Assembly: GCA_002269645.1 (NCBI GenBank)
Contig: NIVC01002646.1
Span: 89,243 to 153,242, forward strand
Source of the DNA: Macrostomum lignano
Taxonomy: Eukaryota
DNA length: 64,000 nucleotides
Direction of reading: 5' to 3'
Within the stretch, counting starts at the first letter, position 1; the number at the start of each line of letters is the position of its first letter. The position numbers and the translations under genes are program-made. The notes under the pieces are model-generated. The model had not been told where the DNA came from, ran no database searches, and saw only the letters and a program-made list of their open reading frames with translations. Shown here piece after piece: positions 1 to 40,076 of this stretch.

Positions 1-405
1 AGTCGCTGGGCCAGCCTCCCAGATCACCAGTTGCTGGGCCAGCCTCCCAGATCCTCAGTTGCTGGGCCACCAACCTCCCAGATCCTCAGTTGCTGGGCCA
101 CCAACCTCCCAGATCCTCAGTTGCTGGCCCAGCCTTCCAGAGTGTCAGTCGCTGGGCCAGCCTCCCAGATCCTCAGTTGCTGGGCCAGCCTCCCAGATCC
201 TCAGTCCCCAGTTGCTGGGCCAGCCTCCCAGATCCCCAGTTGCTGGGCCAGCCTCCCAAATCCTCAGTTGCTTGGACAGCCGCCCAGATCCTCAGTTGCT
301 AGGCCAGCCTCCGGATCCTCAGTTGCTGGGCCAGCCTCTCAGATCCTCAGTTGCTGGGCCAGCCTCTCAGATCCTCAGTTGCTGGACCAGCCTCCCAGAT
401 TCTCA
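1..405 (+). repeat. 28/32-bp minisatellite (GCTGGGCCAGCCTCCCAGATCCTCAGTT), intronic
   Basis: Tandem copies read directly; same unit as 3712-4765 and, inverted, 36205-37953. Boundaries approximate. Confidence 0.95.
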
Positions 406-442
406 ATCCTGACCCATGGCAAGCTTATTTCACTTTCCACAG

Positions 443-632
443 GTGATGCAGCAACGGCAGCATCTCAGCGGCGTCCAGCAGCTCCCAGCCTCCCCATCGC
501 CTTCCTCATCCTCATCGTCGGTGGCTTCGCCTGCGCCTCCGCCGCCGCCGCCACCCCGAAGCGAGACCACCGTGGCCACCGTTGGCCGCCCATTGGCGCC
601 GCCGCCCTACCACCAGGCCGTTGCTAGGCGAG
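443..632 (+). CDS. Penultimate coding exon of an unidentified gene (Pro/Ser-rich tail with PPPY motif)
   Basis: Acceptor ctttccacag|GTG at 442/443, donor GCGAG|gtgagt at 632/633, GC-rich island, open frame VMQQRQ...PPPPPPP...LAPPPYHQAVARR; ends in phase 1, matching exon 3548. Confidence 0.7.
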
Positions 633-894
633 GTGAGTCATAATTGAATTTATTCTTATTATAAGCGCAAATCATAGTTTTTATGCTTGTTGTTCACGTA
701 TTGCTGAAATGCTTTGTATGTTATTCACGCTTCTTTATGTGGTTGGTTGTTATGTTATCACTGGGAGCACTTTTTATTAATTCGGAGGGAATGTATTGAT
801 TTTCCAGATTTGTACTTCTTTGTAGGTTTTATTATGATTTGCTCAATTTCAATTCGCAATCTTTTGGTCAGGTGCCTCTTGTAATCTGCTTCTT

Positions 895-1370
895 GCTATC
901 TACCCTTCCTATCTACTTTCCAATCTACCCTTCCAATCTACTTTCCTATCTACCCTTCCTATCTACCCTTCCTATCTACCTTTCCTATCTACCCTTCCTA
1001 TCTACCCTTCCTATCTACCCTTCCTATCTACCCTTCCTATCTACCCTTCCTATCTACTTACCTATCTACCCTTCCTATCTACCCTTCCTATCTACCCTTC
1101 CTATCTACTTACCTATCTACCCTTCCTATCTACCCTTCCTATCTACCCTTCCTATCTACCCTTCCTATCTACCCTTCCTATCTACCCTTCCTATCTACCC
1201 TTCCTATCTACCCTTCCTATCTACCATTCCCATCTACCCTTCCTATCTACTTTTCCGATCTACTTTTCCTATCTACCCTTCCAATCTACTTTCCTATCTA
1301 CCCTTCCAATCTACTTTTCTATCTACCCTTCCAATCTATTTTTCCTATCTATATCTTCAATCTACTTTCT
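895..1370 (+). repeat. 13-bp minisatellite (CTACCCTTCCTAT)n
   Basis: Direct reading; approximate ends. Confidence 0.9.
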
Positions 1371-2214
1371 TTAACCCTATGCCCTTCTTTTTAAGCTTCT
1401 TTGCCACTGATTTTTGTCAATAATGCTTTAAATTCATTGACATCTTGTTAATTAGAATTTTATTTATAATTTATTAAGTTGATGTGTATTTTTCTCGAAT
1501 CTCAGTGCTGATATTTATTACAATTATCAGTAGAGGTTTCGGACTTAGTAACTGTTTGTTATATTTAACCCACGCACCACTGTCCCATGATTACATAAGT
1601 TAATAAATAAAGATAATCCCTAATCCGGAATACAAAACTTTAACAGATTATTAACAATTATTTATTATAAAGTTTTGCCGTTGTGTGATAACATTTGTCA
1701 CAATTTGTTGATTTTAATAAATCAATCAATTATATCTTTCCCGATTGTAAAATGATTAAATCCTCTACCGAAAACAAAATCACTTTATTTAATAAGCCAA
1801 TCGTATTTGTGCAGTTCCTTTACCTTGCCGTTTTTTTCTTAGAATCTCTCGGATAGAATGACTAAAAATTCCTACAAATTGAACAAGGTATATTTGTTTA
1901 ACTATACTGCAATAACTCATGTTTAATAGTAATATATAACTTAACTATATTTCATTAACCTGCGAAACCAGCAAGCCAATGTCTTTGGCAGCTTAATAAT
2001 GTTATAATATCAATGCATAACAAAGTTATTTTTGTTTTTTTGACCATTATCTATAAAACGACATTTTTTTGGTTTGTTTGAGCTAATCTGCAGTAGTTCG
2101 GTCTGGCTTTTAACTCATGGTGTGCTGGAAATTAACAATGAATGACAGCGTCAAATTGAAGTGCAAAACTTTATAATGCCCGTCAAAATTATTCCAAGGT
2201 CATTTTAAGCTTTA

Positions 2215-2990
2215 TCACTTCGCACTATCTCATTTATGGGTCATTGTTGGTTGCGTCACTTCACATCCTCTCTCATTTATGAGTCATTGTTGGTTGCATA
2301 ACTTAACACCCTCTCTCATTTTTTGAGTCATTGTTGGTTGCATCACTTCACATCCTTTCTCATTTATGAGTCATTGTTGGTTGCATCACTTCTCACCCTC
2401 TCTCATTTATGAGTCATTGTTGGTTGCATAACTTAACACCCTCTCTCATTTTTTGAGTCATTGTTGGTTGCATCACTTCACATCCTTTCTCATTTATGAG
2501 TCATTGTTGGTTGCATCACTTCTCACCCTCTCTCATTTATGAGTCATTGTTTTTTGCATCACTTCACACCCTCTCATTTATGGGTCATTGTTAGTTGCAT
2601 CACTTTACACCCTCTCATTTATGGGTCATTGTTGGTTGCGTCACTTCATACCCTCTCATTTATGAGTCATTGTTGGTTGCATCACTTCACATCCTCTCTC
2701 ATTTATGAGTCATTGTTGGTTGCACCACTTCACATCCTCTCTCATTTATGAGTCATTGTTGGTTGCATCACTTTACACCCTCTCATTTACGGGTCATTGT
2801 TGGTTGCGTCACTTCATACCCTCTCATTTATGAGTCATTGTTGGTTGCATCACTTCTCACCCTCTATCATTTATGAGTCATTGTTAGTTGCATCACTTCA
2901 TACCCTCTCATTTATGAGTCATTGTTAGTTGCATCACTTCATACTTTCTCATTTATAAGTCATTGTTGGTTGCATCACTTTAAACCCTCT
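2215..2990 (+). repeat. 41-43-bp minisatellite (CATCACTTCACATCCTCTCTCATTTATGAGTCATTGTTGGTTG)n
   Basis: Direct reading; approximate ends. Confidence 0.9.
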
Positions 2991-3547
2991 TAATGTCTTT
3001 GTCAAGCAAGCTATTTACATTTAAACTTACATTGAAGGTCATTTTCATGCGTTCTGAACTAGCATTTCCTCTTGTGCACAAACGGCAGTTTTGCTATACT
3101 AATTCACACAGCTCAGTTTTTGTAGTAAACTTCTCTATTTCTAATTAAAAGTTTTGTTTGTGACCGCATTAAAAAAACATCATTTAAAACAACAGTGTTC
3201 ACAACTTGGCTGTAAGAATGTGGTCACCCAGCATTGGTAACTAACTGGAATCCATATTTTCATGTACTTTAAAAGTTAAATCATTCTTCAGATGTAGTTG
3301 AAATTTTAGTGCAAACAAAAATAATGTAATTTTGCACTTTCTAATACTCTGACTAATAGAACTATTAGTAGTGTGTTACACAACTTTTAGTTGACTTTTT
3401 TGAATGATCTGAAAAGCAAATTTATTTGAGAAAGCATGAAAAATTACTGAATGCTATTAAACATTTTAATATTCTTACTAACTTTTTATTTCTATAGTTT
3501 TTATAAGTTTCTATATTGTTTGTTTCTTCATTTAATTTCCATTTCAG

Positions 3548-3627
3548 CTGACACCACAGAGGCCGGAAGTCAGCACTCGACGGTCAGGCAGCAATGCAAC
3601 GATGATGAGTTAATTACTTTTGTGTAA
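3548..3627 (+). CDS. Terminal coding exon of the same unidentified gene (ADTTEAGSQHSTVRQQCNDDELITFV*)
   Basis: Acceptor ttccatttcag|CT at 3547/3548, phase 1 joins exon 443-632 in frame; TAA at 3625-3627; C-terminal T-F-V fits a class I PDZ-binding motif. Confidence 0.65.
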
Positions 3628-3711
3628 CATTCTGCGTGTGATATAGCTTTGTATTTGCTTGGCCCTTCTGGTAGCTTGCTTTTGCTTGCTTTCACTGTGT
3701 TCGCTGTTTGC

Positions 3712-4765
3712 AAGATCCTCATCAGTTGCTGGGCCAGCCTCTCATATCCTCAGTTGCTGGGCCAGCCTCCCAGATCCTCAGTCGCTGGGCCAGCCTCTCA
3801 GATCCTCAGTTGCTGGGCCAGCCTTTCAGATCCTCAGTTGCTGGGCCAGCCTCCCAGATCCTCATCAGTCGCTGAGCCAGCCTCCCAGATCCTCATCAGT
3901 CGCTGGGCCAGCCTCCCAGATCCTCAGTTGCTGGGCCAGCCTCCCAGATCCTCATCAGTCGCTGGGCCAGCCTCCCAGATCCTCAGTTGCTGGGCCAGCC
4001 TCCCAGATCCTCAGTTGCTAGGCCAGCCTCCCAGATCCTCAGTTGCTGGGCCAGCCTTCCAGATCCTCATCAGTCGCTGGGCCAGCCTCTCAGATCCTCA
4101 GTTGCTGGGCCAGCCTCCCACATCCTCAGTTGCTGTGTCAGCCTCCCAGATCCTCATCAGTTGCTGGGCCAGCCTCCCAGATCCTCAGTTGCTGGGCCAG
4201 CCTCTCAGATCCTCATCAGTTGCTGGGCCAGCCTCTCAGATCCTCATCAGTTGCTGGGCCAGCCTCCCAGATCCTCAGTTGCTGGGCCAGCCTTTCGATC
4301 CTCATCAGTTGCTGGGCCAGCCTCTCAGATCCTCAGTTGCTGGGCCAGCCTCCCAGATCCTCAGTTGCTGGGCCAGCCTCCCCGATCCTCATCAGTTGCT
4401 GGGCCAGCCTCTCAGATCCTCAGTTGCTGGGCCAGCCTCCCAGGTCCTCAGTTGCTGGGCCAGCCTCCCCGATCCTCATCAGTTGCTGGGCCAGCCTCTC
4501 AGATCCTCAGTTGCTGGGCCAGCCTCCCAGATCCTCAATTGCTGGGCCAGCCTCCCAGATCCTCAGTTGCTGGGCCAGCCTCCCAGATTCTCAGTTGCTG
4601 GGCCAGCCTCCCAGATCCTCAATTGCTGGGCCAGCCTCCCAGATCCTCAGTTGCTGGGCCAGCCTCCCAGATCCTCAGTTGCTGGGCCAGCCTCCCAGAT
4701 TCTCAATTGCTGGGCCAGCCTCTCAGATCCTCAGTTGCTGGGCCAGCCAGCCTCCCAGATTCTCA
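3712..4765 (+). repeat. 28/32-bp minisatellite (GCTGGGCCAGCCTCCCAGATCCTCAGTT)n
   Basis: Direct reading; source of the spurious 240-390 aa ORFs in the track. Confidence 0.95.
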
Positions 4766-5714
4766 TAGGTACACCTAATGGCATAGTATCAAGGAAGCAG
4801 TTTATTCAGCGATTCCACTAAATATTTCATGTACAAGTTTCATCTCAAGTATGCAAAGAATTCAACCCTGCTTACTGTGTGCTTGCCACCAATAACGGTT
4901 CACACACTGTTGGACCTCGATAATGATTCACATGAGCTGTTATATCATAAGCTAGCCATTCATTCTCTGTCTACAAACTGTGCATTATCCAAAAAGTCTG
5001 AATTATATACGAGCGTAGTAGTTATTTCTAAGTTTAAAACAAAAATCAATTTTAACTGAAATCGGTTATGCTCACCTTTGCCGGCTGTGTTAACCTTTAA
5101 TTCTGTCTACTTATTTATTAATTAATAATACGCCTTATTTATTAACATTTTTCTACAAACTACACTTGTTTGTCCTTTTAGCCAACCAGAAAATGTTTTA
5201 ACATTATTTCTTAATTCTCCACGCAAACTTGGCGCATGAAATTTGGAAATCAAGCCTTATATAATTTAATTTCAAGCTTACCTGTATAACTACTAATTAC
5301 TTTGCTCTATATACTTAGATAAGTAGAAATGGCTGCTTATTTTTGTTTGAATTTTCTTGTTTTTAATTACAAGTAGAAATTAAAAATATGTAATGATATT
5401 CCATGCGCGCGCTTCTGCAGGTACAAATTATTGAATTGCTGTTTTGTCTGTCTAGAATTGTTTGTTTGTGTGTTGCATAAATTGCTTATTTTCTGTTTGT
5501 TGTTGTATATCTCTGTTTAATTGCTACTTCTACCGATTGTATATTGTATTGTAAATGTAAAAATAATTTAAATATAACTGAGAGTTGTGAACGCTTTATG
5601 CAGACCGTTTATGTATAAATAATAATTCTTGATTGTTTGTTGTCTATTTGTCTCTAAATTAATTCACCTTGTATGTATCTTTTGATTTCCGTCCTTCCAT
5701 GTACCTAAATATAG

Positions 5715-6075
5715 CCCTTTGGGATTCTCCTTGCCTTATATCCAACCTCTGGGATTCCCCTTGCCTTTATCCTACCCTCTGGGATTCCCCTTGCCTTTAT
5801 CCTACTTTCTGGGATTCCCCTTGCCTTTATCCTTCTCTCTGGGATTCCCCTTGCCTTTATCCTACCCTCTGGGATTCCCTTTGCCTTTATCCTACTCTCT
5901 GGGATTCCCCTTGCCTTTATCCTTCTCTCTGGGATTCCCCTTGCCTTTATCCTACTCTCTGGGATTCTCCTTGTCTTTATCCTATGGGATTCCCCTTGTC
6001 TTTCTCGTACTCTCTGGGATTCCCCTTGCCTTTATCCTACTCTCTGGGATTCCCCTTGCCTTTATCCTACTCTCT
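5715..6075 (+). repeat. 30-bp minisatellite (CTCTGGGATTCCCCTTGCCTTTATCCTACT)n
   Basis: Direct reading. Confidence 0.9.
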
Positions 6076-6626
6076 ATTCATTCTCTCTTCATTATCCTAC
6101 CTCTTCATAATCTCCTCTCGATTAAATCTACCATAATCCGGTATGTTATGAAGCTATGCAATTATATAACTACATCTGGGATTTGTGCAGAAAATCGAAT
6201 TAACTTTTCTAGTCATTCTACTTAAAGTAAAAACCCGATGAAGTCGAAATTGTTTTTTAAGACACACCTCTGATACGGGACTAAAATATATTTTAGAAGT
6301 ACGTAGTTTAGTAAAGATTATAAATTTATGCTTGTGGTTCCCGGAATGTAGGATTTAATTCAGTGAGATTTAACTAAAAGCTACATTACAGTAAGATTTA
6401 AATTAACATTATCGTATAGAGTCTGGTAAAATAATCAGATCTGGTTAGTATAAGCAGGACTACAAGAACTGACATATAGTTACTTCTTAAGATTCTTCAC
6501 AATGACACATTGTAATACAAGTTTATAATATGCCTACTAGGATACTAGATTCTGACCGCATGACCTTCTCTATACTTGTCCGAAAAACTAAATAAACTTG
6601 GAAACTGTTGTCATGGTTACGAGCTG

Positions 6627-28896
<22,270 letters not shown>

Positions 28897-36108: not shown

Positions 36109-39100
36109 TCATTCATCCCGCCTCTGAATCAGAACTCCTGCGGGAAATGAAGACACGAGTTCGAAAATTTTACTGAGGCAACAATATTCTGCTTAAACGG
36201 GGTGGCGGTGACCCAGCAACTGGGGATCTGGGAGGCTGGCCCAGCGACTGATGAGGATCTGGGAGGCTGGCCCAGCAACTGAGGATCTGGGAGGCTGGCC
36301 CAGCGACTGATGAGGATCTGGGAGGCTGGCCCAGCAACTGAGGATCTGGGAGGCTGGCCCAGCAACTGAGGATCTGGGAGGCTGGCCCAGCAACTGAGGA
36401 TCTGGGAGGCTGGCCCAGCAACTGAGAATCTGGGAGGCTGGCCCAGCAACTGAGGATCTGGGAGGCTGGCCCAGCAACTGAGTATCTGGGAGGCTGGCCC
36501 AGCAACAGGATCTGGGAGGCTGGCCCAGCGACTGATGAGGATCTGGGAGGCTGGCCCAGCAACTGGGGATCTGGGAAGCTGGCCCAGCAACTGAGGATCT
36601 GGGAGGCTGGCCCAGCGACTGATGAGGATCTGGGAGGCTGGCCCAGCAACTGAGGATCTGGGAGGCTGGCCCAGCGACTGATGAGGATCTGGGAGGCTGG
36701 CCCAGCAACTGAGGATCTGGGAGGCTGGCCCAGCGACTGATGAGGATCTGGGAGACTGGCCCAGCAAATGGGGATCTAGGAAGCTGGCCCAGCAACTGGG
36801 GATCTGGGAGGCTGGCCCAGCGACTGATGAGGATCTGGGAGGCTGGCCCAGCAACTGAGGATCTGGGAGGCTGGCCCAGCGACTGATGAGGATCTGGGAG
36901 GCTGGCCCAGCAACTGAGGATCTGGGAGGCTGGCCCAGCGACTGATGAGGATCTGGGAGACTGGCCCAGCAAATGGGGATCTAGGAAGCTGGCCCAGCAA
37001 CTGGGGATCTGGGAGGCTGGCCCAGCGACTGATGAGGATCTGGGAGGCTGGCCCAGCAACTGAGGATCTGGGAGGCTGGCCCAGCAACTGAGGATCTGGG
37101 AGGCTGGCCCAGCAACTGAGGATCTGGGAGGCTGGCCCAGCAACTGAGAATCTGGGAGGCTGGCCCAGCAACTGAGGATCTGGGAGGCTGGCCCAGCAAC
37201 TGAGTATCTGGGAGGCTGGCCCAGCAACAGGATCTGGGAGGCTGGCCCAGCGACTGATGAGGATCTGGGAGGCTGGCCCAGCAACTGGGGATCTGGGAAG
37301 CTGGCCCAGCAACTGAGGATCTGGGAGGCTGGCCCAGCGACTGATGAGGATCTGGGAGGCTGGCCCAGCAACTGAGGATCTGGGAGGCTGGCCCAGCGAC
37401 TGATGAGGATCTGGGAGGCTGGCCCAGCAACTGAGGATCTGGGAGGCTGGCCCAGCGACTGATGAGGATCTGGGAGACTGGCCCAGCAAATGGGGATCTA
37501 GGAAGCTGGCCCAGCAACTGGGGATCTGGGAGGCTGGCCCAGCGACTGATGAGGATCTGGGAGGCTGGCCCAGCAACTGAGGATCTGGGAGGCTGGCCCA
37601 GCGACTGATGAGGATCTGGGAGGCTGGCCCAGCAACTGAGGATCTGGGAGGCTGGCCCAGCGACTGATGAGGATCTGGGAGACTGGCCCAGCAAATGGGG
37701 ATCTAGGAAGCTGGCCCAGCAACTGGGGATCTGGGAGGCTGGCCCAGCGACTGATGAGGATCTGGGAGGCTGGCTCAGCGACTGATGAGGATCTGGGAGG
37801 CTGGCCCAGCAACTGAGGATCTGGGAGGCTGGCTCAGCGACTGATGAGGATCTGGGAGGCTGGCCCAGCAACTGAGGATCTGGGAGGCTGGCTCAGCGAC
37901 TGATGAGGATCTGGGAGGCTGGCCCAGCAACTGAGGATCTGGGAGGCTGGCCCACAACAAAGCACAACAAAGGCTCTCACTTGGTCTCCGTTGATAAACC
38001 TCCTTGAAATACTTGGGCGCAATGGTACCAGTGGCGTCACCCTCGGACAGGATGACCTTGTTCTTGGACAGGACGAACTTGATGCCATCTGCAACAGTTG
38101 CATTGACTGTGCGTCAAAGTTAAAATGGATATGACAAACTAAGGCAGTCATGTCAAACAGTCATGCTCATTCCGCTGCAACTCTTGGACACGAATTCATT
38201 CATACGCTCAAACGAGGTGTACAGCGACTATCGACCTTCTAATAACCAACCTCTCAGCGCCATCTCCAAGTCAAGGTAGATGAGGATCTCAGCAGATCCT
38301 CGCATGCCGGATACGACGCCATCTTCACCGATTTCTCCCGGAGCGAAGTGGATATGAGTCCTGCCCATGGTCTTCAGGCCTTCCTGGCTGATCTGGCGCC
38401 AGTTCTTTAAATAGGTGCCGTGAATCACCACAGGGAACTGGTGAGCATTGGCCAGGTTCACGTCCGTGTATTCGATACCTTCCACTTTCATAGAGTGGCC
38501 TTGGGTTGCCCGCACCTGAGAGAATATGAGAATTGATGGGATAAATATGAGAATTTATGCGCTAACTATAAATGTTGATGGGATAACTATGAATGTTGAT
38601 GGGATAACTATGTATATTGATGGGATAATTATGAAAACCGATGAGGTAAATATTAAATTGATGGGATAAATATGAAAATTAATGGTATATTTTACGCAAA
38701 ACAATGAGTTATTATGAAAACCGATGGGATAAATAATGAAAACTGATGGGATAAATATGAAAAATGATGAGATAATTATGATAATTCATGGGATAATTAT
38801 AAAAACCGATGGGATAAAAATGAAAATGGATGGGATAACTATGAAAAATTATGGGATAAATATGATAATTCATGGGATAATGAGATAATTTTCATAGACT
38901 CAAGGTTCATTCACCTGCAAGCGACCAGTGCTTGGATCCGAGCGCAATTCGAATCGTTTCTTATCGTTAGCGTCGATCACCCGGCGTATGTCATCTACGT
39001 TGACGTCGGCGAACTCACTGTGGGCGAGCATCTCGTCCAGGTGCAGGTAGCCTCCGTCGGCAAACTTGAAGCCCTCCTTCTCGGCACCGTGCCGGAGGAT

Positions 39101-40076
39101 CCAAGCCAGCTTCTTGCTGATGATCACGTCGCGGTCCTTCTGCAAAAAATGATGGGTGAGATGGGCAGAGTGACAATATGGGTTCATTGTAGAGTGACAA
39201 TATGGGTCAATGTAGAGTGACAATATGGGTCAGTATAGAGTGACAATATGGGTCATTGTAGAGTGAATATATGGGTCATTGTAGAGTGACGATATGGGTC
39301 ATTGTAGAGTGACAATATGGGTAATTTTAGAGTGACAATATCAATATGGGTCAATATAGACTGACAATATGGGTCATTTTAGAGTGACAATATGGGTCAT
39401 TGTAGAGTGACAATATGGGTCATTGTAGAGTGACAGTATGGGTCAGTATAGAGTGACAATATGGGTCATTGTAGAGTGACAATATGGGTCAGTATAGAGT
39501 GACAATATGGGTCAATGTAGAGTGACAATATGGGTCATTGTAGAGTGACAATATGGGTCATTGTAGAGTGACAATATGGGTCAGTATAGAGTGACAATAT
39601 CGGTCAGTATAGAGTGACAATATGGGTCATTTTAGAGTGACAATATATGGGTCATTGTAGAGTGACAGAGTGACAACGCTCAAGGTAGTCACTAAAACAC
39701 ACGCAAACGCTACTACTAAGCTGGTAAGTAGCAAAAACAACTGAACTAACATTCAATTCTGGAGGCTTCAGTCGAATCTTAGCACCGCGCACACTGAACC
39801 TCAACTTGCCATCCGAGTGCACAGCGTTGTGCACCTCGCTGATGGAAACGCCAGCAAATTCATCTAGTTTAAGTATCTCCTCAATAAAGAAGTAATTATC
39901 TGAAAAAAATATTAAAAGTATAAAAATTCATAGAATATGTTCTATTGTAAATTTTCATAATTAGAAACACCAAGCATACCTGGAAGCATTCTTATGTCAG
40001 TTTCTTTGTAACCTCCATTGAAGAACCACTCAAGTTTTTTGAGTATATATTCATCCTTTTCTTTGCTGTTGCTCAT
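36109..40076 (-). CDS. TRPT1: tRNA/RNA 2'-phosphotransferase (Tpt1/KptA) with an extra degenerate N-terminal lobe, 6 exons, 290 aa
   Basis: Exons 40076-39980, 39899-39751, 39139-38915, 38515-38251, 38088-37981, 36137-36109, GT-AG and phase-consistent (873 nt). Motifs ISKKLAWILRHG, NDKKRF, VRATQGHS, VVIHGT, MGRTHIHFA, NKVIL, APKYF. Confidence 0.92.
36205..37953 (-). repeat. 28/32-bp minisatellite (same family as 1-405 and 3712-4765) with 722-bp higher-order duplication, TRPT1 last intron
   Basis: Rare variants recur at +722 (AGTATCT 36481/37203; GAGACT 36752/37474 and 36957/37679). Confidence 0.95.
38520..38890 (+). repeat. Degenerate ~21-bp AT-rich minisatellite (GATGGGATAAATATGAAAA..), TRPT1 intron 3
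   Basis: Direct reading. Confidence 0.85.
39160..39675 (+). repeat. 23-bp minisatellite (GTAGAGTGACAATATGGGTCATT)n, TRPT1 intron 2
   Basis: Direct reading. Confidence 0.93.

What the first reader, a model, noticed from the sequence alone, without database searches (positions are those of the whole stretch)
39751..40076. TRPT1 carries a second, catalytically dead copy of its N-terminal RNA-binding lobe
Exons 1-2 encode KDEYILKKLEWFFNGGYKETDIRMLPDNYFFIEEILKLDEFAGVSISEVHNAVHSDGKLRF. This aligns without major gaps to the true lobe in exon 3, RDVIISKKLAWILRHGAEKEGFKFADGGYLHLDEMLAHSEFADVNVDDIRRVIDANDKKRF. The Arg-His pair of the Tpt1 Arg-His-Arg-Arg tetrad (LRHG) has become FNGG, while the KRF-type Arg is kept. 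Canonical Tpt1 has one RNA lobe and one NAD+ lobe (established). Animal TRPT1 has no clear tRNA-splicing substrate, so an added pseudo-lobe could be an extra nucleic-acid or protein-binding or autoinhibitory module revealing its real role (inference). I do not know this architecture from the literature.
Basis: partly seen in the sequence, partly recalled or inferred. Interest (0 to 1): 0.75.

Follow-up and report, generated by a model that had tools for sequence, protein, structure and literature searches.

The report
Flatworm TRPT1 with duplicated dead RNA-lobe
The Macrostomum lignano gene for the RNA-repair-type enzyme TRPT1 really does encode an extra, catalytically dead copy of its RNA-binding domain, made by an ancient duplication of two exons and kept by natural selection in flukes, tapeworms and a monogenean fragment, which gives a new handle on an enzyme whose job in animals is unknown.

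Summary
Confirmed. The window is Macrostomum lignano. On the minus strand a six-exon TRPT1 gene (40076-36109) encodes 290 aa identical to the RNA-seq-derived GenBank model PAA56265.

Exons 1-2 (40076-39751) encode an 82-aa module homologous to the enzyme's own N-terminal RNA lobe:
- BLASTP E = 2e-10.
- Profile-profile probability 97%.
- The AlphaFold model superposes on human TRPT1's N-lobe (TM 0.76, 1.9 Å).

The Arg-His dyad and the nucleotide-crevice residues are lost; only the third tetrad Arg is kept.

The same extension, with a nearly invariant LRFSxRGSKxRLKPPELN-KD junction, occurs in trematodes and a cestode (full-length proteins) and in a monogenean fragment, and in Schistosoma japonicum records from what I take to be cDNA accession series. 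dN/dS is 0.20.

The pseudo-lobe keeps the ancestral phase-1 intron and is bounded by phase-0 introns, exactly like the true lobe and the single lobe of Lingula. This marks a tandem duplication of a two-exon unit.

Extra N-lobes with the same intron also occur in an annelid and a bivalve. N-lobe-only arrays occur in a cephalopod and a metagenomic protein.

Function is inferred: most likely an accessory nucleic-acid-binding or positioning winged helix. I found no literature on it.

The parts
39980..40076 (-). Exon 1: start codon (ATG 40076-40074) and the first half of the pseudo-lobe (residues 1-32 plus the first base of D33). It contains FNGG in place of LRHG.
   Evidence: There is an in-frame stop eight codons upstream of the ATG. 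The exon ends CCA G|gtatgc, phase 1.
39900..39979 (-). Intron 1 (80 nt, phase 1), two codons before the conserved aromatic residue. It sits at the same position and phase as the intron inside the true lobe of Trichobilharzia, Spirometra, Lingula, Tegillarca and Owenia.
39751..39899 (-). Exon 2: second half of the pseudo-lobe (residues 33-82). It carries the invariant R66 and the basic wing plus linker LRFSVRGAKIRLKPPELN, and ends in phase 0.
39140..39750 (-). Intron 2 (611 nt, phase 0), the junction between the duplicated units. It is mostly a 23-bp minisatellite (39167-39667) and contains an in-frame ATG at 39187-39185 with no evidence of use.
   Evidence: The equivalent phase-0 junction intron is present in Trichobilharzia (51 nt), Schistosoma and Spirometra.
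38915..39139 (-). Exon 3: the true RNA lobe (residues 83-157) with S90-K91, R98-H99 and K142/R144.
38251..38515 (-). Exon 4: the QGHS hinge and most of the NAD+ lobe (HGT motif H189-T191, and R209, the fourth tetrad Arg).
37981..38088 (-). Exon 5: the end of the NAD+ lobe (…KYFKEVYQRRP).
36109..36137 (-). Exon 6: the last nine codons (RVLIQRRDE) and the stop codon TGA (36111-36109). It is reached across a 1843-nt intron filled by a 28-bp minisatellite (36212-37958).

Best explanation
SHOWN. Residues 1-82 of M. lignano TRPT1 are a degenerate copy of the enzyme's own winged-helix RNA lobe.
- The copy was created by tandem duplication of the ancestral two-exon unit that encodes that lobe. The unit has phase-0 boundaries and an internal phase-1 intron.
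- The duplication happened before Macrostomorpha and Neodermata diverged.
- The copy is translated in frame upstream of a complete, apparently active Tpt1 unit.
- It has been kept under purifying selection.
- It cannot be a second active site. The Arg-His dyad and the Ser-Lys/Lys crevice residues that hold the 2'-phosphate nucleotide are gone, and there is only one NAD+ lobe.

INFERRED. The pseudo-lobe most likely acts as a non-catalytic accessory module packed next to the true lobe, forming a tandem winged-helix platform. Its invariant basic wing (R66, R70, K73, R75, K77) and rigid Pro-rich linker would add nucleic-acid contacts or position the substrate. That would change the affinity or selectivity of TRPT1 for a structured RNA or DNA end rather than its chemistry.
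For: Homology:
- BLASTP E = 2e-10.
- hhalign probability 97.3%.
- Partial Pfam PF01885 match.
- PDB profile search: Tpt1 entries are the six best hits and eight of eleven.

Fold:
- The full-length AF2 model has pLDDT 93 and pTM 0.80, and the pseudo-lobe's secondary-structure order mirrors the true lobe.
- The isolated pseudo-lobe model's best PDB matches are Tpt1 N-lobes: 8tfz at E = 9.6e-4, and human 7yw3 at TM 0.76 with rmsd 1.9 Å. RNA-binding La motifs come next.

The catalytic unit is intact:
- PF01885 at 196 bits.
- R98, H99, R144, R209 and the HGT motif are invariant.
- TM 0.94 to mouse TRPT1.

Expression and splicing:
- P0001 comes from what I take to be the RNA-seq/StringTie/TransDecoder annotation.
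- S. japonicum records AAW24665, CAX75732 and CAX70718 carry the same junction.

Conservation and selection:
- 22 invariant positions across 9 flatworm pseudo-lobes, concentrated in the wing and linker.
- dN/dS is 0.20, against 0.08 for the true lobe and 0.05 for the NAD+ lobe. The binomial probability against neutrality is about 1e-4 to 6e-4.

Duplication mechanism: intron positions and phases are identical in the pseudo-lobe, the true lobe and the Lingula single lobe.

Loss of catalytic and crevice residues: read against the residue roles in PMC10622864.
Against: - No binding or activity data exist.
- The overall charge of the pseudo-lobe is about neutral, by my hand count from the sequence.
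- Most residues that contact the nucleotide in solved Tpt1 complexes are lost, so any nucleic-acid binding would have to use a different surface.
- The Calicophoron daubneyi gene model lacks the extension, and no pseudo-lobe was found between about 13.8 kb upstream of its true-lobe exon and the end of the locus. The module may therefore be dispensable in some lineages.
- dN/dS is 2-4 times higher than in the catalytic lobes.
Confidence: 0.6

Rival explanations
1. Autoinhibitory or regulatory decoy. The dead lobe competes with the true RNA lobe for docking on the NAD+ lobe, or caps the active-site cleft, and so gates activity until a partner or substrate displaces it.
For: - Tpt1 lobes are connected by a mobile hinge and move relative to each other (PMC10622864).
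- The pseudo-lobe keeps the one tetrad arginine (R66) that contacts the ADP-ribose 1''-phosphate or RNA 2'-phosphate.
- The pTM of 0.80 suggests a defined inter-domain arrangement.
Against: - The QGHS hinge that connects a lobe to the NAD+ lobe is replaced by KPPELN.
- The pseudo-lobe is tethered to the far (N-terminal) end of the true lobe by a short linker.
- There is no direct evidence of contact with the NAD+ lobe.
Confidence: 0.15
2. Protein-interaction or scaffold module. The winged helix has been re-used to bind a protein partner or to localise the enzyme, not to bind nucleic acid.
For: - The nucleotide-binding residues are lost while a different surface (wing plus linker) is invariant.
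- The full model draws weak structural matches (Foldseek E = 0.09-0.6, TM about 0.2) to multi-winged-helix protein-binding proteins (STK19, Stn1, ESCRT-II VPS25), on my reading of those proteins.
Against: - The closest non-Tpt1 structural neighbours of the isolated module are RNA-binding La motifs.
- The conserved wing is strongly basic.
- No partner is known.
Confidence: 0.15
3. Non-functional relic or annotation artefact. Exons 1-2 are a decaying duplicate that is mis-joined to the real gene, or is spliced in but neutral.
For: - GC3 of the pseudo-lobe is 0.48, against 0.75 and 0.68 for the rest of the CDS.
- The partial Pfam score is below the gathering threshold.
- An in-frame ATG exists in intron 2.
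- The Calicophoron model lacks the extension.
Against: - The reading frame is open, the splice sites are GT-AG and the junction is in phase in every lineage examined.
- The wing and junction sequence is nearly invariant from Macrostomum to Schistosoma and Spirometra.
- dN/dS is 0.20.
- S. japonicum sequence records carry the junction.
- The M. lignano model is transcript-based on my reading of the locus tags.
Confidence: 0.04
4. An unrelated winged-helix domain was fused to TRPT1. On this reading it is convergence or exon shuffling from another gene, not a copy of the enzyme's own lobe.
For: Winged helices are common, and La motifs score nearly as well structurally.
Against: - Sequence searches pick Tpt1 as their top hits.
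- The internal phase-1 intron and the phase-0 boundaries coincide with those of the true lobe.
Confidence: 0.02

Closest known systems
Canonical Tpt1/KptA/TRPT1 (Pfam PF01885): one N-terminal winged-helix RNA lobe plus one C-terminal NAD+ lobe. Examples are human 7YW3, mouse 7YW2, Clostridium thermocellum 6E3A and Pyrococcus 8TFI.
   Same: Residues 83-283 are a complete member of the family. The match covers the full length of PF01885 at 196 bits. The R-H-R-R tetrad, the HGT motif and the QGHS hinge are present. The model has TM 0.94 to mouse TRPT1.
   Different: An additional N-lobe copy (residues 1-82) precedes the enzyme. It lacks the Arg-His dyad, the Ser-Lys crevice residues and the QGHS hinge, and it has a wing hairpin about 6-7 residues shorter. 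In the libraries I could search, no paper that mentions TRPT1 also mentions flatworms or the other spiralian groups I queried.
Schizosaccharomyces pombe Tpt1-Yae1 fusion (PMC12810181)
   Same: It is another lineage-restricted, atypical multi-domain Tpt1 in which a non-phosphotransferase module is attached to a complete catalytic domain.
   Different: There the added module is an unrelated C-terminal Yae1 domain with its own essential function. Here it is an N-terminal, internally duplicated and catalytically dead copy of the enzyme's own lobe.
Multi-N-lobe Tpt1 relatives found here: Owenia fusiformis CAH1790725 (four degenerate lobes plus Tpt1), Tegillarca granosa KAJ8308379 (one extra lobe plus Tpt1), Argonauta hians GAB1608604 (two lobes, no NAD+ lobe) and a metagenomic 847-aa protein with ten lobes and no NAD+ lobe.
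   Same: All show multiplication of the N-lobe. In Owenia and Tegillarca the extra lobes checked (three of Owenia's four, plus the Tegillarca one) keep the same phase-1 intron, so they arose by the same exon-pair duplication route.
   Different: These extra lobes score better against a true-lobe profile than against the flatworm pseudo-lobe profile. They keep the long wing. In a neighbour-joining tree the Owenia extras and the Argonauta pair form their own clades, and Tegillarca's extra lobe sits next to the canonical lobes rather than with the flatworm pseudo-lobes. They are therefore probably independent events. Tegillarca's extra lobe still has LRHG.
La motif and other RNA-binding winged helices (LARP1 LaM 7SOO, La 1ZH5)
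   Same: They are the next-best structural neighbours of the isolated pseudo-lobe (TM about 0.7).
   Different: There is no sequence relationship. Homology evidence points to Tpt1 only.
2DBD nuclear receptors of flatworms and molluscs (PMC10497141)
   Same: By analogy only: a nucleic-acid-binding domain is duplicated inside a conserved protein, and the feature is reported from Platyhelminthes and Mollusca.
   Different: It is an unrelated protein family, and there both DNA-binding domains look functional.

Membership tests
Tpt1/KptA/TRPT1 (PF01885), catalytic unit, residues 83-283 | Full-length match to PF01885 above the gathering score | tested here: met
   196.3 bits against a cutoff of 26, covering profile positions 1-177 of 177
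Tpt1/KptA/TRPT1 (PF01885), catalytic unit, residues 83-283 | [quoted passage not shown] | tested here: met
   R98, H99, R144, R209 and H189-G190-T191 are invariant in a 13-sequence alignment. Residue roles are taken from PMC10622864.
Tpt1/KptA/TRPT1 (PF01885), catalytic unit, residues 83-283 | Two-lobe fold as in solved TRPT1 structures | tested here: met
   AF2 model against 7yw2: target-normalised TM 0.94, rmsd 1.5 Å. Against 7yw3: TM 0.93.
Tpt1/KptA/TRPT1 (PF01885), catalytic unit, residues 83-283 | NAD+-dependent RNA 2'-phosphotransferase or nucleic-acid ADP-ribosyltransferase activity | not testable with these tools
   Needs an enzyme assay
Tpt1 N-terminal RNA lobe, pseudo-lobe, residues 1-82 | Sequence homology to the N-lobe | tested here: met
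   BLASTP E = 2e-10. hhalign probability 97.3%, E = 2.8e-11. The partial Pfam hit alone is just sub-threshold at 24 against 26 bits.
Tpt1 N-terminal RNA lobe, pseudo-lobe, residues 1-82 | Winged-helix fold of the N-lobe | tested here: met
   Predicted only. pLDDT is 80 alone and 86-96 in the full-length context. The best Foldseek PDB hits are Tpt1 N-lobes, with TM 0.76 and rmsd 1.9 Å to 7yw3.
Tpt1 N-terminal RNA lobe, pseudo-lobe, residues 1-82 | Arg-His dyad (tetrad residues 1 and 2) | tested here: not met
   N20-G21 in M. lignano. The pair is K/Q/R-G in trematodes and S-H in Spirometra. No species has both residues.
Tpt1 N-terminal RNA lobe, pseudo-lobe, residues 1-82 | Third tetrad arginine (K-x-R-F) | tested here: met
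   R66-F67 is invariant in all 9 pseudo-lobes. The preceding Lys is kept only in M. lignano and Fasciola.
Tpt1 N-terminal RNA lobe, pseudo-lobe, residues 1-82 | Ser-Lys nucleoside-crevice residues and the QGHS hinge | tested here: not met
   The S90 equivalent is L, A or G. The K91 equivalent is K only in M. lignano. QGHS is replaced by KPPEL.
Tpt1 N-terminal RNA lobe, pseudo-lobe, residues 1-82 | Shared gene structure with the true lobe (evidence of paralogy) | tested here: met
   The phase-1 intron lies two codons before the conserved Tyr/Phe, and the boundaries are phase 0. This holds in the pseudo-lobe (M. lignano, Trichobilharzia, Schistosoma, Spirometra), in the true lobe (Trichobilharzia, Schistosoma, Spirometra) and in the Lingula single lobe.

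The most novel reading that the evidence does not exclude
The Tpt1 RNA lobe is an autonomous nucleic-acid-binding module whose copy number has been expanded repeatedly by duplication. Flatworms carry one dead copy. Owenia has four. A cephalopod and an uncultured eukaryote have lobe-only arrays of two and ten. In flatworms the fixed pseudo-lobe retargets TRPT1 to a lineage-specific structured RNA or DNA substrate, or gates its ADP-ribosyltransferase activity. Identifying what the pseudo-lobe binds would then reveal the long-sought physiological substrate of animal TRPT1.
Probability: 0.2. Interest if true: 0.7.

Novelty: new variant of a known kind. Interest (0 to 1): 0.5.

Why it matters
TRPT1 is conserved across animals. 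Yet animals ligate tRNA exons without leaving a 2'-phosphate, and the enzyme's real substrate is unknown. A dead extra substrate-binding lobe, fixed since before the Macrostomorpha/Neodermata split and still under selection, implies that substrate recognition or regulation by TRPT1 matters in flatworms.

It also gives an experimentally separable handle: delete it, swap it, or use it as bait.

The work further shows that the N-lobe is encoded by a phase-symmetric exon pair that has been duplicated repeatedly in spiralians. The extra copy is not recorded as a second PF01885 domain in the precomputed annotation, because the Pfam model spans both lobes and the partial hit falls below threshold. 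The flatworm members include major human and livestock parasites (Schistosoma, Fasciola, Paragonimus), so a lineage-specific feature of a conserved enzyme is also of comparative interest.

Tried and rejected
1. Wider survey for planarian, polyclad, catenulid and cyclophyllidean members. The search for homologous proteins failed three times on the pseudo-lobe alignment or sequence. The last allowed search returned nothing. Distribution therefore rests and the representative-library search.
2. Dating the duplication by similarity of pseudo-lobes to flatworm versus non-flatworm true lobes. Only the M. lignano copy prefers flatworm lobes (42.7 against 32.8 bits). The neodermatan copies show no preference, so the result is uninformative.
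3. Inspecting the predicted interface between the pseudo-lobe and the rest of the protein. Model coordinates are not exposed, so only pLDDT, pTM and secondary structure could be used.
4. Literature. No paper combines TRPT1 with Schistosoma. Among papers matching TRPT1 or the flatworm/spiralian terms, none of the top-ranked ones mentions TRPT1. The first, broad search was uninformative. 'Tpt1 + KptA + N-terminal extension' gave only general ADP-ribosylation reviews.
5. Pfam scan of ten long ORFs elsewhere in the window. It returned only spurious low-complexity hits (DUF4081, MSG) on ORFs that lie inside minisatellite arrays.
6. A second TRPT1 copy in the window. None was found by tblastn.
7. 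An alternative single-lobe start. An in-frame ATG at 39187 lies inside the intron-2 minisatellite, but nothing supports its use.
8. Calicophoron daubneyi. No pseudo-lobe was found upstream of the true lobe within the DNA fetched. I cannot tell whether this is loss, a very long intron or an assembly problem.
Full report
**What is at the coordinates**

The window is eukaryotic. A protein search identifies it as Macrostomum lignano: the spliced product is 100% identical to PAA56265.1 (BOX15_Mlig027782g1).

The gene lies on the minus strand and has six exons:
- 40076-39980
- 39899-39751
- 39139-38915
- 38515-38251
- 38088-37981
- 36137-36109

All junctions are GT-AG. The 873-nt CDS encodes 290 aa. 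The ATG at 40076 is preceded by an in-frame stop eight codons upstream.

**Is the resemblance real?**

Residues 1-82 align to the true RNA lobe (residues 83-148) over 66 residues without gaps, at 29% identity and BLASTP E = 2e-10.

Scanned alone, residues 1-82 hit Pfam PF01885 at profile positions 3-66, with E = 4.6e-5 and 24 bits. This is just under the gathering score of 26.

A profile of nine flatworm pseudo-lobes aligns to a profile of true lobes with hhalign probability 97.3% and E = 2.8e-11. Searched against all PDB sequences, Tpt1 entries are its six best hits and eight of eleven: yeast 7yw4, Pyrococcus 8tfi, Thermococcus 9ld4 and mammalian 7yw2/7yw3.

AlphaFold2 models the whole protein with mean pLDDT 93 and pTM 0.80. 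The pseudo-lobe's element order is H2-22, E35-37, H38-42, H52-60, E67-70, E73-76. The true lobe's order is H85-100, H116-120, H130-139, E145-149, E156-160, so the two match.

Modelled alone (pLDDT 80), the pseudo-lobe's best PDB matches are Tpt1 N-lobes. Pyrococcus 8tfz scores E = 9.6e-4, and human TRPT1 7yw3 gives TM 0.76 and rmsd 1.9 Å over 77 columns. RNA-binding La motifs follow.

Residues 83-283 are a complete Tpt1:
- PF01885 at 196 bits.
- The R98-H99-R144-R209 tetrad and the HGT motif are invariant.
- TM 0.94 to mouse TRPT1.

**Is it expressed and spliced as claimed?**

Nothing here lets me look at reads directly. Four independent lines support the junctions.

1. The Mlig_3_7 gene set was built only from RNA-seq, using StringTie/TACO, TBONE and TransDecoder (PMC5730564). 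From the naming style and my own knowledge I take the BOX15_Mlig locus tags to belong to that set. P0001 is flagged partial and begins with translated 5' leader (QFSLAG-M), as a transcript-derived ORF would.
2. A second M. lignano copy (PAA62391) and two UniProt models from another annotation carry the same N-terminus.
3. The S. japonicum records AAW24665 (clone SJCHGC01721), CAX75732 and CAX70718 come from accession series I know as cDNA-derived. All read …RGSKVRLKPPELN-KNPDVILSKKL…, that is, pseudo-lobe joined to true lobe.
4. The junction peptide is nearly invariant in gene models from Paragonimus, Echinostoma, Fasciola, Trichobilharzia, Heterobilharzia, five Schistosoma species and the cestodes Spirometra/Sparganum. 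A Protopolystoma (Monogenea) fragment carries the same LRFSVRGSKVRLKPPELN signature up to the exon boundary.

Non-flatworm animal, fungal and protist homologues in the same search are about 200-220 aa and have one lobe.

**Selection**

Across nine flatworm pseudo-lobes, 22 columns are invariant. They are concentrated in the wing and linker: L65-R66-F67-S68, R70-G71, K73, R75-L76-K77-P78, E80-L81-N82.

Between Schistosoma turkestanicum and S. mattheei, Nei-Gojobori dN/dS is 0.20 for the pseudo-lobe, 0.08 for the true lobe and 0.05 for the NAD+ lobe. The pseudo-lobe shows 12.5 non-synonymous and 13.5 synonymous differences, where neutrality predicts 80% non-synonymous. The binomial probability is about 1e-4 to 6e-4. 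The module is therefore constrained, though less tightly than the catalytic lobes.

**How it arose**

In Lingula, which has a single lobe, the N-lobe is encoded by two exons:
- A phase-0 intron precedes YFQGND.
- A phase-1 intron splits the first Gly codon of GGF (GAA G|gtaac … ag|GT GGA TTC).
- A phase-0 intron follows QGHSVQ.

In Trichobilharzia the true lobe has exactly this structure: a phase-0 start at KDPDV, then CCT G|gtatg … ag|GT GGC TAC, then QGHSVN|gtaag. The pseudo-lobe, immediately upstream, repeats it: a phase-0 start at RKSV, then CCA G|gtaag … ag|AA AAT TAT, then PPELN|gt in phase 0. A 51-nt intron separates the two units.

Schistosoma and Spirometra show the same arrangement.

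M. lignano keeps the pseudo-lobe's phase-1 intron (CCA G|gtatgc … cag|AT AAT TAC; 39980/39899) and the phase-0 junction intron (39751/39139). Its true lobe has lost the internal intron.

The internal intron falls at the aligned position in both copies, two codons before the conserved Tyr/Phe. This is the signature of a tandem genomic duplication of a phase-symmetric (0-0) exon pair.

All flatworm pseudo-lobes share a wing hairpin about 6-7 residues shorter than the canonical one (RFSVRGSKVRL against RFELRSDPSTGRLQVRA). They also form one clade in a neighbour-joining tree of lobes (no bootstrap support was computed). This points to a single event. On the accepted phylogeny Macrostomorpha branches early within Rhabditophora, so the event predates the common ancestor of Macrostomorpha and Neodermata.

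**What has been lost and what has been kept**

I mapped the pseudo-lobe onto the residue roles described for archaeal Tpt1 complexes (PMC10622864).

| True-lobe residue | Role | Pseudo-lobe equivalent |
|---|---|---|
| Arg 1 of tetrad (R98) | catalytic dyad | N, Q, K, R or S |
| His (H99) | catalytic dyad | G everywhere except Spirometra (H) |
| Ser-Lys (S90-K91) | lines the flipped-nucleoside crevice | replaced, except K13 in M. lignano |
| Lys of K-x-R (K142) | 2'-phosphate cage | mostly lost |
| Gln of QGHS (Q162) | contacts the 2'-phosphate | absent, because QGHS has become KPPEL |
| Arg 3 of tetrad (R144) | catalytic, phosphate contact | R66, invariant |

There is only one NAD+ lobe. The module therefore cannot catalyse anything, and it is unlikely to bind a 2'-phosphate nucleotide in the canonical way.

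**Most likely function (inferred)**

A stably folded winged helix is tethered by a short, invariant, Pro-containing linker to helix 1 of the true RNA lobe. It has a strictly conserved basic wing. Its nearest non-Tpt1 structural relatives are RNA-binding La motifs.

The best explanation is an accessory nucleic-acid-binding or substrate-positioning module that turns the RNA lobe into a tandem winged-helix platform. I put this at about 0.6. The rivals are autoinhibition of the NAD+ lobe (about 0.15), a protein-interaction module (about 0.15), a neutral relic or artefact (about 0.04) and an unrelated fused winged helix (about 0.02). None of these can be separated without biochemistry.

**Wider context found on the way**

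I searched the pseudo-lobe profile against 1.84 billion representative proteins. Besides flatworm fragments, it found other proteins with multiplied N-lobes:
- Owenia fusiformis: four degenerate lobes plus a complete Tpt1.
- Tegillarca granosa: one extra lobe, still with LRHG, plus a Tpt1 unit (the model matches PF01885 positions 3-141 of 177).
- Argonauta hians: two lobes and no NAD+ lobe.
- A metagenomic 847-aa protein with ten lobes and no NAD+ lobe.
- A foraminiferal giant protein.

These are documented.

In Owenia and Tegillarca the extra lobes checked (three of Owenia's four, plus the Tegillarca one) retain the same phase-1 intron. They score better against the true-lobe profile than against the flatworm pseudo-lobe profile. 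In the tree the Owenia extras and the Argonauta pair form their own clades, and none of the extra lobes groups with the flatworm pseudo-lobes. They look like independent uses of the same duplicable exon pair.

This makes the flatworm case less singular. It also suggests that the N-lobe is a module that works on its own.

**Novelty**

The proteins are in public databases, annotated simply as 2'-phosphotransferase. The precomputed Pfam annotation lists PF01885 once per protein.

The literature searches turned up nothing that links TRPT1 to flatworms or describes a duplicated N-lobe. The only atypical architecture I found described is the S. pombe Tpt1-Yae1 fusion.

I classify the finding as a new variant of a known kind. 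It is of moderate interest in itself. Interest would be higher if the pseudo-lobe turns out to define TRPT1's substrate in these animals.

Noticed in passing
window 39167-39667, 38523-38880, 36212-37958: Three of the five TRPT1 introns are each largely occupied by a different minisatellite, with units of 23, 21 and 28 bp. Intron 5 (1843 nt) is almost entirely the 28-bp array. Read without splicing, exon 5 runs on into that array as an open frame for about 60 codons.
   Followed up: partly
window 1-405, 3722-4748 and 36212-37958: The same 28-bp unit (AGTTGCTGGGCCAGCCTCCCAGATCCTC) forms arrays at three places in the window. In total more than 30 distinct minisatellite or microsatellite arrays score at least 400 in the 64 kb. 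This fits the 15% tandem-repeat content reported for this genome (PMC5730564).
   Followed up: partly
window 40076-39751 versus 39139-37981: Codon composition shifts sharply within one gene. GC3 is 0.48 in the pseudo-lobe exons, against 0.75 in the true lobe and 0.68 in the NAD+ lobe. The cause is unknown; regional composition or different constraint are possibilities.
   Followed up: no
window 39187-39185 (minus strand): An in-frame ATG lies inside intron 2, within the minisatellite, 16 codons upstream of exon 3 and downstream of a stop. It could in principle start a single-lobe isoform. There is no evidence that it is used.
   Followed up: no
L002 (Lingula anatina) 5873-7431 versus 10800-12412: The NAD+-lobe exons of Lingula TRPT1 are present twice in tandem (71-91% protein identity to the query across the matched exons, about 4.9 kb apart). 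The annotated isoform uses the last exon of the second copy.
   Followed up: no
L011 (Owenia fusiformis) 13920-14552: Five tandem copies of a small 3' exon encoding DKQGY(L/F)RPKYFKDVLNRKT lie within the Owenia TRPT1 locus. Each has the same flanking splice-site-like sequence.
   Followed up: no
P0121 (metagenome, 847 aa) and P0127 (Argonauta hians GAB1608604, 277 aa): These proteins consist only of Tpt1 N-lobe repeats (ten and two copies). No stretch matching the NAD+ lobe was found. Several copies keep LRH. They may be stand-alone RNA-binding repeat proteins derived from Tpt1.
   Followed up: partly
L009 (Calicophoron daubneyi) 1-13841: This trematode's TRPT1 model (212 aa) lacks the pseudo-lobe. 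tblastn finds none between about 13.8 kb upstream of the true-lobe exon and the end of the locus. This could be a secondary loss, a very long intron or an assembly gap.
   Followed up: partly
P0011 (Schistosoma mansoni Smp_037640, 423 aa): The S. mansoni model carries an insertion of about 80 aa of unrelated sequence between QGHTVT and IEGLD. This is exactly at the phase-0 intron, so it looks like intron retention in the annotation.
   Followed up: no
L006 and L008 (ENA metagenome contigs ERZ8811434, ERZ25070786): Two unnamed eukaryotic contigs from metagenome assemblies carry the flatworm-type arrangement of pseudo-lobe followed by true lobe. In L006 the pseudo-lobe lies in a single ORF and is more divergent (RFSIHGNLIRTKPLELN). 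The source organism is unknown.
   Followed up: partly
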